From Saccostrea cucullata (Eukaryota), in NCBI RefSeq assembly GCF_032062105.1, contig NW_026931863.1, forward strand, positions 248,001 through 312,000: DNA of 64,000 bases, given 5' to 3'. Below the pieces are notes generated by a model. That model was not told the origin of the DNA and did no database searches. It worked only from the letters and a program-made list of their open reading frames with translations. Both the position numbers and the translations under genes were made by a program. The stretch's first letter is position 1, and every line of letters starts with the position of its first letter. Shown here piece after piece: positions 58,501 through 61,500 of this stretch.

Positions 58501-61500
58501 AGACTTCAACAAAGGCTCGTCTGACTACTTCCGTGCACATCCGTCTGTTACTCTGTGTCTACAGAAAGTTTTCTCTAAGGTCTACGAAGTTACAAAGAAT
58601 AAGGTAAGAATTACTTGATAATATTCTAAGTAATAAACATCAACTTGAAGAATTTCGATGACGTCACTACCAGAATGCATGTGTAAATTATCAGTAATGA
58701 CTTTCTGTGAATATTCTTCATTGTTTATAGTTGAAAATTGACAAAGGATATGAACCAATATCAGTGACAAGCGGCTACACACCGACTGACAGGAAGAACT
58801 ACCTTAGCAGCGGATGTGGGGCCGTAATCTCCTACAGAACATCAGGGGACGTCAATGAAATCGCAAAAGCTGCTCTTACCCTCTGTCCCGTCATTTTTGA
58901 AGTAAGCTGCTAGATACGTTTGTTTGTTCATTTTTTGGAAACAAACAAAGCTTTAAATGTTTTTTTTTAAATCAATAAAAATTATTTTTAGTAATTTATA
59001 TTGCCACATAAATAGTATCTTTAACTTTTGTGTGCATTGCAGCGTTTTGTATGATTTTAAAACTATCATGTCGATATTACAGAGAAGTTATGAACGTACA
59101 TGTATACTTTCAGCAAAACCAAAGAGATATTGGTATATACGTAGACTCAACCCAGGTTTTAATCTTCATGACTGGTGCCATTACCTCTCTACCTGTATAC
59201 CAAGGTGGAGGCCTCACCCAATTAAGCGCTGAAACAATGGTCAACCAAGGATTAGGTACTAGTTATTTGACTGACAATTGCCACTTTCTTTGAAAATTGA
59301 ATTCATTGTAAATTTGCAATGATTCTGTCAAGCACTGAGGCGAATTACTTTACTTTATATCTATCTTTTTTTTTAATTTAGCACCAAAGAATATTCCAGA
59401 CTGCAGCAATTTCCCACAGGTGTCTAATGGGGATCATTACCCCTCTGGTAAAACTGACCCCGCAACTGTAGTAGGAGTAGTTGATGAAGCCGTTACCACA
59501 AGTATGGACACTGACGTCAGAAGGTATGTGACAAAATCTCAAAGTCAGGGAAATGTTTTGTTGGTCTTGCAACCCTTCTTCCCCTGCAAAACTAGAAATT
59601 ACTGCGACGAGACTGCAAACCTTTGTTTCAAAAATACCCGAGTTTATCGCTCATTTTCAAATCTGCTTGAATCATTTTTCTTTTCCGAGAAACATTGCAT
59701 TGTCATTCTGTTTTATTTTTTTTTAAAATCTATATACCCCTTTAAAACGTTTTGCAGAATGGCCCAATATATTGGGACTGATGTAGATTTCACCGGATGT
59801 ATGACATATCCAGGGAACATTATAACCAACAGGTAAGTCCCAATCAATCAGTATGAGTTGCATTTTTACCGAATATCGCTGAATTTCAGAGATATGTATG
59901 ACTGTGAGGAAAAGTTTTCACGAATCTCTAATATTCGCGGCAGTGAAATTTTTACGTGCAGATAGTATCCATTATTTCCAAACAAAAAAAAAATTAACGC
60001 AAATAGGAAGAGCTCATGGAAGTGGCTCGTACCTTTTGACCGTGGTTTGCGACGATGAGAAGTGATCTGTATTTAAGAAACTATTTTGTATAAAATGATT
60101 CTAATCTTTGCTTTAGATGCCCTGTTCGTGTGATGAGCCCAAGACTGTACAATGTCCTCGTTAATCTAAAAGCTTATGCAAAGAATGCTAACTTAGGCGG
60201 ATCAGGTACTTACATGTATTTACTCAAAATTGTTTGCAAGTGTAACATGTATTTGGCGAAACATGTAAAAATAAATCTGTAAACAGAAACCTTGATGCTT
60301 ATATTATATAATTTTTTCCTTATTAGGTGGAAAAATTACAGTCGAGGAAGCTTGGAATGAAGGCGCGGATCCAGCCAGCTTGAGAGCAGAGGGGCGCATG
60401 ATGAAGGTCAAGTTGTCCTCTGGTAACACCGCTGGCAATCTTGCAAGCCTGGCACAGTTTGCGATATGTGCCAAAGCTGATCACGTGTCAAACATGGGTT
60501 AGTTCGAATTCTAAGTGTACAAAAAAGTTATATTTTGAAAATTGTTAGTGTGTCATGGCTGTACGTTCGTTTTATAAAACTAACCCTATACATGTACATG
60601 GTATGTAGGGAAATACGAGTTTAATGAGTAAAAATCTTTAATACAGGAACCCACCTTCTGGTATCATCGAAGAAACAGAAAGGAAGAGTAGAGGCCACGG
60701 TCAATTTTCCCAAAGCCACCCTGGTGTCTGTTGAACCACCTGCATCTAAAGCTTCAATTTACGCCTTGCCAACAGAAATGATGGATGAAGAAGACCAATA
60801 TCCACTTTTCGACTCTAGTGGAAGGGTAAAAAAAAGACTGTTTTTCATACTTCTTGATCCTAGTACGGTAAAGTGATTTTTTTTTTAAAGATTATTGACG
60901 GATTTTGGATTTGTTTTTTTTCACAGTTGAATCTTCCAATAAGTCAAGGAACAACCCTTTCGAAATTCATTGCAAAAGATACCCAATTTAGGTACTTGCG
61001 TCTGGCACCCGCTATTGCACAGTGTTACTCAAAACTGATTTACAATGAAAACAAGTGGCTCAATGCTTCTGGTAAGTAGATTTTGAAATAATTGAACATT
61101 GCTTCGAGGTCTTTAAGCGTTTAGATAATATTAACGATGTGTTTTTAATTGTCAGATCCACCAGTGGATATTGAGATTGTACGAGCCTTTATGACAAACG
61201 AGGAACAGAAGTCGTTGATACAAAGTTCTGACGAACGCTACAACACCCATACTTTGGGACAGGCTTTGGAACTGAGATACGCCACAACTGTGGTCAACAG
61301 CACAACAGTTTACAACAACGTGAGATTAATTAAAAAGGTTGTAGATGTCTGTGGGCCAGTTTTCAATACATACGGTTTTAACATGAACCTTGGGTTGTAT
61401 CCCAAATCTGTTTTCGTCAGCATGGACGAGGATCAATTTCTCTTTTGGTCCAGTACTGAATCGTTAATCCCACAAGGCTTCACCGAGCAAGAATTCGATC

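What the first reader, a model, noticed from the sequence alone, without database searches (positions are those of the whole stretch)
59382..60690. Complete but Zn-less, Hint-less Hedgehog N-terminal-like domain embedded inside a large secreted protein
Seen: exons 6-10 of the 55569-63692 gene translate to ...VSNGDHYPSGKTDPATVVGVVDEAVTTSMDTDVRRMAQYIGTDVDF...PVRVMSPRLYNVLVNL...KITVEEAWNEGADPASLRAEGRMMKVKLS...LASLAQFAICAKADHVSNMGTHLLVSSKKQ. Established: this follows the Hedgehog signalling domain block by block (KQFIPN..G..EGKITR..F..L..NYNPDIIF..DRLMTQR..LRVTEGWDE..SLHYEGRAVDIT..LARLAVEAGFDWV..HIHCSVK). The three Zn ligands appear replaced (SLH->SLR, AVD->MMK, HIH->HLL) and the acidic Ca-binding loop is lost. 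There is no N-terminal CGPG palmitoylation motif, no Hint/Hog domain, and no vWA/cadherin as in Hedgling. Inference: a non-lipidated, non-metallated Hedgehog-fold module in a new architecture, possibly a decoy or modulator of Patched/Ihog/Hhip-type binding, or a matrix/defence protein.
Basis: partly seen in the sequence, partly recalled or inferred. Interest (0 to 1): 0.82.

Follow-up and report, generated by a model that had tools for sequence, protein, structure and literature searches.

The report
Metal-less Hedgehog-like domain in oyster protein
An expressed oyster gene encodes a secreted 925-residue protein whose middle domain is a true relative of the Hedgehog signalling domain without its metal sites, flanked by two bacterial-type peptidase-like domains, and it belongs to an unstudied family found from molluscs to amphioxus.

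Summary
The spliced frame is open for 925 codons and matches the Saccostrea cucullata model LOC134233763 exactly.

The middle domain (residues 206-385) is a Hedge domain, but only by indirect evidence:
- Pfam finds nothing in the oyster protein itself.
- The domain is 34-45% identical to orthologous domains in other phyla, and those score up to 80 bits on HH_signal.
- A family profile hits ShhN at E 1e-18.
- An AlphaFold model of the Crassostrea gigas orthologue covers the whole ShhN fold (TM 0.83).

All three zinc ligands are replaced in oysters. Two of the three are lost in every family member. The calcium site is lost in oysters but nearly intact in starfish and amphioxus.

- The Hedge domain sits between two mutually homologous peptidase-M15A-like domains, both also without a metal triad.
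- A conserved furin-type site and an unknown cysteine-rich C-terminal domain follow.
- The family spans bivalves, gastropods, an annelid, echinoderms, hemichordates and amphioxus.

dN/dS is about 0.05. I read it as a secreted, convertase-cleaved protein that binds rather than cuts; its ligand is unknown. The architecture seems undescribed in the literature I could search.

The parts
55569..55625 (+). Exon 1: start codon and signal-peptide-like hydrophobic N-terminus (residues 1-19). An upstream in-frame ATG at 55551 is the one used in the NCBI model.
   Evidence: RNA loose ends at 58056 carry the end of exon 1. It is the only hydrophobic 19-mer in the protein. P0074 starts 6 residues earlier.
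55626..59245 (+). D1, residues 20-205 (exons 2-5: 58056-58142, 58437-58603, 58731-58901, 59114-59255). Peptidase-M15A-like (LAS-fold) domain without a metal triad.
   Evidence: Joints. hhalign of D1 against D3 gives probability 99.6% and E 1.8e-24 over 185 columns. One weak Peptidase_M15_3 hit, E 0.0025, in the Saccoglossus member. Motif table.
59246..60699 (+). D2, residues 206-385 (end of exon 5, exons 6-9: 59382-59523, 59758-59832, 60117-60205, 60327-60497, and the start of exon 10 at 60647). Hedge (Hedgehog N-terminal signalling) domain without metal sites.
60383..60385 (+). Arg codon at the position of Zn ligand Shh H141. This position is His in 14 of 15 family members and Arg only in the oyster cluster.
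   Evidence: Profile alignment to 1vhh, site table, coordinates.
60404..60406 (+). Lys codon at the position of Zn ligand Shh D148. It is never Asp in the family and is Lys in 7 of 15 members.
60652..60660 (+). His-Leu-Leu at the position of Shh H181-I182-H183, so Zn ligand H183 is Leu. The His codon is polymorphic: transcripts of all four runs read ACT TAT (Thr-Tyr) in place of ACC CAC (Thr-His) at 60649-60654.
   Evidence: tables 5 and 5c (letters AACTTAT between the two sides of the joint)..
60700..61664 (+). D3, residues 386-612 (rest of exon 10, exon 11 at 60927-61071, exon 12 at 61156-61533, start of exon 13). Second peptidase-M15A-like (LAS-fold) domain. It keeps H-x6-E but has no third ligand.
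   Evidence: AlphaFold pLDDT 89.6. VIA-align gives Z 10.5 to the 1lbu Zn DD-peptidase, Z 7.0 to ShhN and Z 5-6 to M15 endolysins. Foldseek top hits are the same fold. Nearest ESM Atlas clusters are all Peptidase_M15_3/M15_2. Motifs.
61737..61760 (+). Polybasic run Q-R-K-R-R-R-R-R (residues 637-644): predicted proprotein-convertase (furin-type) cleavage site.
   Evidence: R-x-[KR]-R present here and at the same alignment position in 14 of 16 family members. Cleavage itself is inferred.
61761..63593 (+). C-terminal cysteine-rich domain, residues 645-893 (exons 13-16 and the start of exon 17). Fold unknown.
   Evidence: Conserved Cys pattern. No Pfam hit. No PDB sequence hit. No relation to D1-D3 by hhalign. 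Atlas feature search blank.
63594..63692 (+). Conserved dibasic K-R followed by a roughly 30-residue tail and the stop codon (63690-63692). The transcript continues into a spliced 3' UTR (loose end at 63738).
   Evidence: K-R at this alignment position in 12 of 13 members. Stop position. Loose end.

Best explanation
The gene at 55569-63692 is the Saccostrea orthologue of an unnamed, ancient bilaterian family of secreted proteins of about 920-970 residues.

Domain order: signal peptide, M15A-like domain (D1), Hedge domain (D2, the finding), second M15A-like domain (D3, homologous to D1), polybasic furin-type site, cysteine-rich C-terminal domain of unknown fold, dibasic site, short tail.

All three N-terminal domains have the Hedgehog/DD-peptidase (LAS) fold, and none keeps a complete His-Asp-His zinc triad. 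I therefore read the protein as working by binding rather than hydrolysis. It is probably cut by a proprotein convertase into an N-terminal three-domain fragment and a C-terminal fragment.

Shown: expression, splicing, open frame, homology, folds, loss of metal ligands, strong purifying selection.

Inferred: secretion, convertase cleavage, lack of catalysis.

Guess (about 0.3): the ligand is a peptide- or glycan-bearing polymer, either extracellular matrix proteoglycan or bacterial wall peptide. Those are what this fold binds elsewhere.
For: Expression and splicing: spliced transcripts in four runs of four studies.

Open frame: 925 codons, identical to P0074.

Family: collinear homologues of 914-970 residues in bivalves, gastropods, an annelid, a starfish, a crinoid, two hemichordates and amphioxus.

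D2 is a Hedge domain:
- HH_signal is over the cut-off in 8 of the 10 first homologues scanned, best 80 bits.
- The family profile gives E 1.2e-18 to ShhN.
- The model matches ShhN at TM 0.83 and E 1e-11 over the full chain, while M15 peptidases reach only E 0.05.
- The window's own domain links to those homologues at E 6e-29 and 8e-57.

D1 and D3: they are repeats of one domain type. D3 has the DD-peptidase fold, with Z 10.5 to 1lbu and nearest Atlas clusters all Peptidase_M15_3/M15_2.

Metal ligands: the D148 and H183 equivalents are lost in every member, and the H141 equivalent is lost in oysters. D1 keeps only the H-x-H strand. D3 keeps only the first His.

Processing sites: a furin motif in 14 of 16 members and K-R near the C-terminus in 12 of 13.

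Secretion: the only hydrophobic stretch is N-terminal.

Selection: against the C. gigas cDNA, dN/dS is about 0.04 overall and 0.05 in D2, with a gapless alignment.
Against: - Pfam does not recognise the oyster domain itself. The Hedge assignment for this sequence rests on transitive homology and on a model of the 78%-identical C. gigas orthologue, built from an alignment that includes clearer Hedge domains.
- D1 was not folded. Its fold is inferred from D3.
- Secretion and convertase cleavage rest on motifs only.
- Loss of the canonical triad does not strictly exclude catalysis. Oyster D3 keeps H-x6-E.
- dS is saturated (above 2), so the dN/dS values are rough.
- Nothing here identifies a ligand, a tissue or a phenotype.
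Confidence: 0.72

Rival explanations
1. One reading: the Hedge module acts as a soluble decoy or modulator that binds Hedgehog partners (Patched, Ihog/Boc/Cdo, Hhip).
For: The fold is a full HhN fold. Deuterostome members keep 5 of 6 Ca ligands and the first Zn His, so partner binding is more conceivable there. The genome has a normal hedgehog gene.
Against: In solved complexes, as I know them and did not test here, Hhip and Patched contact the Zn groove and Cdo/Boc need the Ca site. In the oyster protein all three Zn ligands and 5 of 6 Ca ligands are replaced. The domain is buried between two other domains. No binding test was run.
Confidence: 0.08
2. The three LAS domains are a pro-region or carrier. 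The active product is the convertase-released cysteine-rich C-terminal fragment, or the short tail after K-R, acting as a secreted ligand.
For: The polybasic site and the distal K-R are conserved across phyla. The C-terminal domain is the most conserved part between the two oysters, at 90% identity, and has about 10 conserved cysteines. The tail carries a conserved N-W-E..W motif in non-oyster members.
Against: D1-D3 are under equally strong constraint, with dN/dS 0.03-0.06, which is unusual for a mere pro-region. Cleavage is unproven. The C-terminal fold is unknown. This reading is compatible with the main explanation and does not exclude it.
Confidence: 0.12
3. It is still an active metallopeptidase that uses non-canonical ligands, for example D3 with H-x6-E in oysters or H-x6-D in Potamilus.
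For: D3 keeps the first His in most members and an acidic residue at +7 in some. D1 keeps an H-x-H strand in many members. D3's closest structure is an active Zn DD-peptidase.
Against: No single domain in any member has all three ligands. The third-ligand His of D3 is replaced by Phe or Tyr. Pfam M15 models do not match.
Confidence: 0.05
4. The Hedgehog resemblance is chance, or only the generic M15/LAS fold rather than a specific Hedge domain.
For: Pfam and phmmer find nothing in the oyster sequence alone. Exon 9 scores below the cut-off.
Against: Pairwise E 6e-29 and 8e-57 to domains that pass HH_signal. Profile E 1e-18 to ShhN. The model's HhN matches are ten orders of magnitude better than its M15 matches.
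Confidence: 0.02

Closest known systems
Hedgehog N-terminal signalling (Hedge) domain of Hh/Shh/Ihh/Dhh (Pfam PF01085; PDB 1vhh, 2wfx, 3n1f)
   Same: Same fold over the whole domain (TM 0.83, about 164 columns). The conserved core motifs are in register. Orthologues in other phyla pass the Pfam cut-off.
   Different: The domain is internal rather than directly after the signal peptide. There is no Cys-Gly-Pro-Gly start and no Hog/Hint autoprocessing domain, so neither palmitate nor cholesterol can be added. The Zn triad is gone, and in oysters the Ca site as well. Most members other than the oysters carry a cysteine-rich insert (W-C-G..C.D-C) that the oyster copy lacks.
Hedgling (Hedge domain fused to vWA, cadherin and EGF repeats; sponges, cnidarians; PMC2362128, PMC6027127)
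   Same: A Hedge domain without a Hog domain, with an incomplete Hh/DD-peptidase motif, in a large extracellular protein.
   Different: In Hedgling the Hedge domain is N-terminal and is followed by adhesion modules and a membrane anchor. Here it is flanked by two M15A-like domains, with no vWA, cadherin or EGF match and no transmembrane segment. This family was found in bilaterians. Hedgling is reported from non-bilaterians.
Bacterial Hh/DD-peptidases and peptidase family M15A (Streptomyces albus Zn DD-peptidase 1lbu; MepK/YcbK; phage L-Ala-D-Glu endolysins)
   Same: D3, and by homology D1, share this fold (Z 10.5 to 1lbu; Atlas clusters Peptidase_M15_3/M15_2). Relics of the H-x6-D and H-x-H motifs lie at the expected places.
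   Different: No complete metal triad. No Pfam M15 match above threshold. These are animal secreted proteins arranged in tandem with a Hedge domain.
Drosophila Hedgehog and C. elegans Hedgehog-related proteins
   Same: There is precedent for Hedge-family or Hh-related secreted proteins that work without the Zn peptidase motif (fly Hh; PMC6027127) or as apical matrix components (PMC10793445).
   Different: Fly Hh keeps the Hog domain and lipidation. The nematode proteins share the Hog domain, not the Hedge domain.

Membership tests
Hedge domain (Pfam PF01085 HH_signal) | Profile match above the curated cut-off (22.1 bits) | tested here: not met
   Window protein (P0074), its isolated domain, and the C. 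virginica and O. edulis orthologues give no hit at E <= 10. Exon 9 alone gives 15.4 bits. Orthologous domains of other phyla do pass, at 27-80 bits.
Hedge domain (Pfam PF01085 HH_signal) | Homology to bona fide Hedge domains by profile or transitive search | tested here: met
   Family profile against PDB gives ShhN at E 1.2e-18. BLASTP of the window domain against HH_signal-positive domains gives E 6e-29 and 8e-57.
Hedge domain (Pfam PF01085 HH_signal) | Complete HhN three-dimensional fold | tested here: met
   AlphaFold model of the C. gigas orthologue's domain (78% identical to the window's), pLDDT 88. Foldseek gives ShhN, IhhN and DhhN at E 1e-11, TM 0.83, about 164 columns.
Hh/DD-peptidase (LAS) zinc enzymes | His-Asp-His zinc triad (Shh H141, D148, H183) | tested here: not met
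   R, K and L at these positions in the window. D148 and H183 equivalents are absent in all 15 members. D1 and D3 also lack a full triad.
Hedgehog ligands (Hh proteins) | Double calcium site (Shh E90, E91, D96, E127, D130, D132) | tested here: not met
   Only the E127 equivalent is kept in oysters. 5 of 6 are kept in Asterias and one Branchiostoma paralogue.
Hedgehog ligands (Hh proteins) | C-terminal Hog/Hint autoprocessing domain, giving the cholesterol adduct | tested here: not met
   No Hint or Hog Pfam match in any of 10 full-length members or in the oyster proteins.
Hedgehog ligands (Hh proteins) | Hedge domain directly after the signal peptide, with an N-terminal Cys for palmitoylation | tested here: not met
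   The domain starts at residue 206, after D1.
Hedgling | N-terminal Hedge domain followed by vWA, cadherin and EGF modules | tested here: not met
   No vWA, cadherin or EGF Pfam match in the family. The Hedge domain is internal.
Peptidase M15A (for D1 and D3) | DD-peptidase fold | tested here: met
   D3 gives Z 10.5, rmsd 2.6 A over 120 residues to 1lbu, and TM 0.54-0.56 to Atlas clusters that are all Peptidase_M15_3. D1 is linked to D3 by hhalign at 99.6%.
Peptidase M15A (for D1 and D3) | Pfam Peptidase_M15 profile match above the cut-off | tested here: not met
   0 of 16 D3 sequences match. 1 of 15 D1 sequences matches, at E 0.0025 and below the cut-off.

The most novel reading that the evidence does not exclude
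This family is a surviving relative of the ancestral animal Hh/DD-peptidase protein. On this reading the Hedge domain arose by duplication and divergence among tandem M15A-like domains inside such a secreted protein, and was later joined to a Hog domain to make Hedgehog. That would give an animal-internal origin for the Hedge domain, as an alternative to the Hedgling route or direct bacterial transfer. It would also define a third, bilaterian-wide class of Hedge-domain proteins, possibly with their own receptor.
Probability: 0.12. Interest if true: 0.85.

Novelty: new variant of a known kind. Interest (0 to 1): 0.6.

Why it matters
The papers I read describe Hedge domains in three settings: Hedgehog itself, Hedgling of sponges and cnidarians, and a few bacterial peptidases. 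Where the Hedge domain came from is still argued (PMC2362128, PMC6027127).

This family is a further setting. It is conserved from molluscs and annelids to echinoderms, hemichordates and amphioxus. In it the Hedge domain stands between two domains that look more like bacterial DD-peptidases, and all three have lost catalysis.

That gives new material for the origin question. It also gives a natural experiment on what a Hedge fold does without zinc, calcium or lipids, and a conserved secreted protein of unknown function that can be studied in tractable marine animals. For oyster annotation, it names a domain that Pfam misses.

Tried and rejected
Searches that found nothing or led nowhere:
- Pfam on single exons. 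Only exon 9 gave a sub-threshold HH_signal hit.
- Pfam and phmmer-against-PDB on the window's own protein via P0074. No Hedge hit, so direct single-sequence detection fails.
- Family profiles of D1, D3 and the C-terminal domain against PDB sequences. Only chance-level hits.
- hhalign of D1 and D3 against D2. Only weak matches (E 1e-3 and 0.03), in the expected register but not significant. Common origin of D1/D3 with D2 rests on fold, not sequence.
- hhalign of the C-terminal domain against D2 and D3, and an ESM Atlas feature search of it. Nothing.
- Word-indexed protein search with the full alignment. It returned only oysters and Pinctada, so it adds nothing on absence elsewhere. I make no claim that vertebrates, ecdysozoans or cnidarians lack the family.
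- Literature searches by gene identifiers and by 'hedge-like' and related words. No paper on this family.
- Rusticalin (PMC6339383) was checked and is a different, ascidian M15 protein.

Rejected readings:
- Pseudogene: it has an open frame, is expressed, and has dN/dS about 0.05.
- Membrane protein: it has no second hydrophobic segment.

Not run: no complex prediction, because I do not claim a binding partner.
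Full report
**1. What is in the sequence**

The window is a piece of a 1.17-Gb animal genome, G000:C14000:248001-312000. Reading 59200-60900 shows short open segments bounded by AG and GT. 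I laid RNA contigs of three runs and raw oligo-dT reads of a fourth, from four different studies, on 58000-63800. They also show all other introns from 58056 to 63589.

Two joints were printed as non-canonical. Both are explained by nearby polymorphisms:
- At 60497|60647 the reads carry ACT TAT instead of the reference ACC CAC just after the joint.
- At 62810|63107 the last exon base differs.

Loose ends at 58056 carry the end of exon 1, which is the signal-peptide exon at 55569-55626.

A note on method. No typed or joined spliced model was sent to any search or folding tool. Exons were searched by reference. The exons were joined only inside local scripts, read from the window file, to check the frame, to compare with database proteins and to estimate substitution rates. 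All searches and folds that need the whole protein used database proteins by id.

Joined locally, the 17 exons give 2778 nt with a single stop at the end, so 925 codons. The product is identical at 925 of 925 residues to P0074. That protein is the NCBI model LOC134233763 of Saccostrea cucullata, which starts 6 residues earlier at the ATG at 55551. The window therefore comes from that oyster or a genome indistinguishable from it here. The transcript runs on into a spliced 3' UTR (loose end at 63738).

**2. Is the Hedgehog resemblance real?**

On the oyster sequence alone it is weak:
- Of six exon translations, only exon 9 (60329-60496) touches Pfam HH_signal. It scores E 0.016 and 15.4 bits against a cut-off of 22.1, over profile positions 98-151 of 161.
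- The complete protein, its isolated domain and the C. virginica and O. edulis orthologues give no HH_signal hit even at E <= 10.
- phmmer of the domain against all PDB sequences finds no Hedgehog.

The link is made through relatives. A full HMMER scan of 1.84 billion representative proteins with the large exon 12 found 33 proteins. Among them is a set of collinear proteins of 914-970 residues. By their source names these come from:
- oysters (C. gigas, C. angulata), an ark clam, a scallop, unionid mussels and Solemya;
- the gastropods Patella and Batillaria;
- the annelid Owenia;
- the starfish Asterias and the crinoid Anneissia;
- the hemichordates Glandiceps and Saccoglossus;
- Branchiostoma, with two paralogues.

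A later word-indexed search added C. virginica, O. edulis, Saccostrea and Pinctada. All are labelled 'uncharacterized protein' or, by UniProt's automatic rule, 'Hedgehog N-terminal signalling domain-containing protein'.

Eight of the ten first full-length homologues pass HH_signal at the position equivalent to the finding. The best is Glandiceps at 80 bits and E 1.8e-22. P0012 is covered over profile positions 15-154.

The window's own domain (P0074:212-391) aligns end to end with the Glandiceps domain at 34% identity and E 6e-29. It aligns with the P0012 domain at 45% identity and E 8e-57.

A profile of the 15 domains hits mouse ShhN (1vhh) at E 1.2e-18. A second, weak stretch lies in register over the N-terminal half.

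An AlphaFold model of the C. gigas-cluster orthologue's domain, which is 78% identical to the window's, has mean pLDDT 88 and pTM 0.85. Foldseek matches it to ShhN, IhhN, DhhN and fly HhN at E about 1e-11, probability 1.00 and target-normalised TM 0.83. About 164 columns align on chains of 145-152 residues, so the whole fold is present. The next fold class, the M15 peptidases ChiX and LdcB, reaches only E 0.05-0.1.

So the domain is a specific and complete Hedge domain.

**3. Metal sites**

I used the profile alignment to 1vhh and the 16-sequence alignment to read each ligand position (coordinates).

Zinc:
- The Shh H141 position is Arg in the window (60383-60385). It is His in all 14 non-oyster members.
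- The D148 position is Lys (60404-60406). It is never Asp in the family, and Lys is the commonest residue there (7 of 15).
- The H183 position is Leu (60658-60660). It is never His.
- The E177 position (catalytic base) is variable.

Two of three zinc ligands are therefore missing in the whole family, and oysters have lost the third.

It is polymorphic: all four RNA runs read Tyr there, as does C. gigas.

Calcium: the oyster keeps only the E127 equivalent. Asterias and one Branchiostoma paralogue keep five of the six ligands. Most members other than the oysters also carry a cysteine-rich insert (W-C-G..C.D-C) before the R-C motif. The oysters and P0012 lack it.

The oyster copy is thus the most stripped-down form of the domain.

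**4. What surrounds it**

The exons either side are not unrelated.

Residues 20-205 (D1) and 386-612 (D3) are homologous to each other: hhalign gives probability 99.6% and E 1.8e-24 over 185 columns. Neither has a Pfam family. Among all members there is one sub-threshold Peptidase_M15_3 hit.

The D3 model has pLDDT 89.6. Its structural matches are:
- the Streptomyces albus zinc DD-peptidase 1lbu, at Z 10.5 and rmsd 2.6 A over 120 residues;
- ShhN (Z 7.0) and fly HhN (Z 6.8);
- M15 endolysins, VanXY, VanY, VanX and MepA.

Foldseek's top ranks are the same fold. The nearest ESM Atlas clusters are all Peptidase_M15_3/M15_2, the YcbK/MepK family, at TM 0.54-0.56.

Against D2, the profiles of D1 and D3 align only weakly (E 1e-3 and 0.03), but in the register expected for the shared core.

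Relics of the LAS motifs remain. D1 keeps an H-x-H strand in many members. D3 keeps the first His, with Glu at +7 in oysters and Asp in Potamilus. No domain in any member has all three ligands.

After D3 comes a polybasic run (Q-R-K-R-R-R-R-R, 61737-61760). It fits R-x-[KR]-R and is present in 14 of 16 members. Then follows a domain of about 250 residues with some ten conserved cysteines. Near the end is a K-R pair conserved in 12 of 13 members, followed by a roughly 30-residue tail.

The C-terminal domain matches nothing in Pfam, in PDB sequences, in the Atlas feature search or in D1-D3.

The only hydrophobic stretch long enough for a membrane span is the N-terminus. I therefore infer a soluble secreted protein.

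**5. Is it functional?**

Against the C. gigas cDNA (L019) the alignment is gapless over 925 codons, with 83% amino-acid identity. dN is 0.11 and dS is saturated (above 2). dN/dS is about 0.04 overall and 0.03-0.06 in each of D1, D2, D3 and the C-terminal domain, with D2 at 0.05. The ratios are rough because of saturation, but they are far below 1.

Together with the expression evidence, this excludes a decaying gene.

**6. Other copies**

The family profiles find at least four more loci in this genome that hold both D2-like and D3-like pieces: C12878, C20375, C14078 and C14548. Two of their single-exon Hedge-like frames pass HH_signal on their own, at 39-40 bits. They too have non-ligand residues at the zinc positions.

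An earlier first-stage note of this scan (s1-710890) describes 'dead' Hedgehog and M15 pieces clustered on another contig of this genome. That fits these paralogues, though I could not see its coordinates.

The true hedgehog gene lies on C21915.

**7. How it most likely works**

Shown:
- an expressed and strongly constrained gene;
- three tandem domains of the Hedgehog/DD-peptidase fold;
- none with a zinc triad.

Inferred:
- secretion;
- cleavage at the polybasic site, and perhaps at K-R;
- action by binding rather than hydrolysis.

The ligand is unknown. From what this fold does elsewhere, I would look first at two classes. The fold grips peptidoglycan stem peptides in M15 enzymes, and Shh needs its zinc centre to associate with matrix (PMC8052667). 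So my candidates are matrix proteoglycans and microbial wall fragments, and I give this no more than about 0.3.

The frequent Lys at the D148 position might fill the space of the lost metal. That is speculation.

It is weakened for oysters because the zinc groove and the calcium site are both gone. To my knowledge these are the surfaces Hedgehog partners use in solved complexes; I did not test this here.

A compatible alternative is that the C-terminal fragment is the active product.

**8. Comparison and novelty**

Bürglin (PMC2362128) and Roelink (PMC6027127) describe Hedge domains in Hedgehog, in Hedgling and in some bacterial peptidases.

This protein is not a Hedgehog. It has no Hog domain and no N-terminal position for the Hedge domain, and so no lipidation. 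It is not a Hedgling either. It has no vWA or cadherin and no anchor, and the Hedge domain is internal.

Searches of the held literature by gene identifiers and by descriptive words found no paper on the family. That library is incomplete.

The non-oyster members are already flagged by an automatic domain rule, so the bare fact 'Hedge domain without Hog' can be found in databases. What seems new is:
- the full architecture, with two flanking M15A-like domains, the furin site and the C-terminal domain;
- the family's phyletic spread;
- the family-wide loss of the triad;
- the recognition of the Pfam-invisible oyster branch.

I rate it a new variant of a known kind, with interest 0.6.

Noticed in passing
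G000:C20375:726424-735230 and G000:C14078:3320-22658 (loci L003, L004, L009, L010, L013, L014, L018): Two further loci each hold two Hedge-like pieces and a D3-like piece. Their single-exon Hedge-like frames of 226-229 aa pass Pfam HH_signal (39-40 bits) yet have Phe and Arg at the zinc His and Asp positions.
   Followed up: partly
G000:C12878:64501-66719 and G000:C14548:101449-103283 (loci L008, L011, L017, L005): Two more compact loci with D2-like and D3-like matches within about 2 kb. The family therefore has at least five loci in this oyster genome.
   Followed up: no
window 60649-60654: Transcripts of all four RNA runs read ACT TAT (Thr-Tyr) where the assembly reads ACC CAC (Thr-His). That is three linked substitutions in 8 bases right after a splice acceptor, and they made the aligner print a false non-canonical joint. 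C. gigas also has Tyr here.
   Followed up: yes
window 51490-52668 (+): An intronless 392-aa open frame about 3 kb upstream of the gene has no Pfam match at E <= 0.01. It was not examined further.
   Followed up: no
window 42782-43387 (-): A 201-aa open frame with a Rhodanese-like domain (Pfam E 2e-14), on the opposite strand.
   Followed up: no
P0073 (Pinctada imbricata, 1691 aa): This gene model contains two copies of the whole architecture in tandem (two HH_signal stretches and two matches to exons 9 and 12). It is either a fused annotation of neighbouring paralogues or a real duplication.
   Followed up: no
Alignment A1, C-terminal tail after the K-R site: Non-oyster members share a conserved tail motif (S-P-E..L-R-E....N-W-E..W) after the dibasic site. 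It looks like a releasable amphipathic peptide and has diverged in oysters.
   Followed up: no
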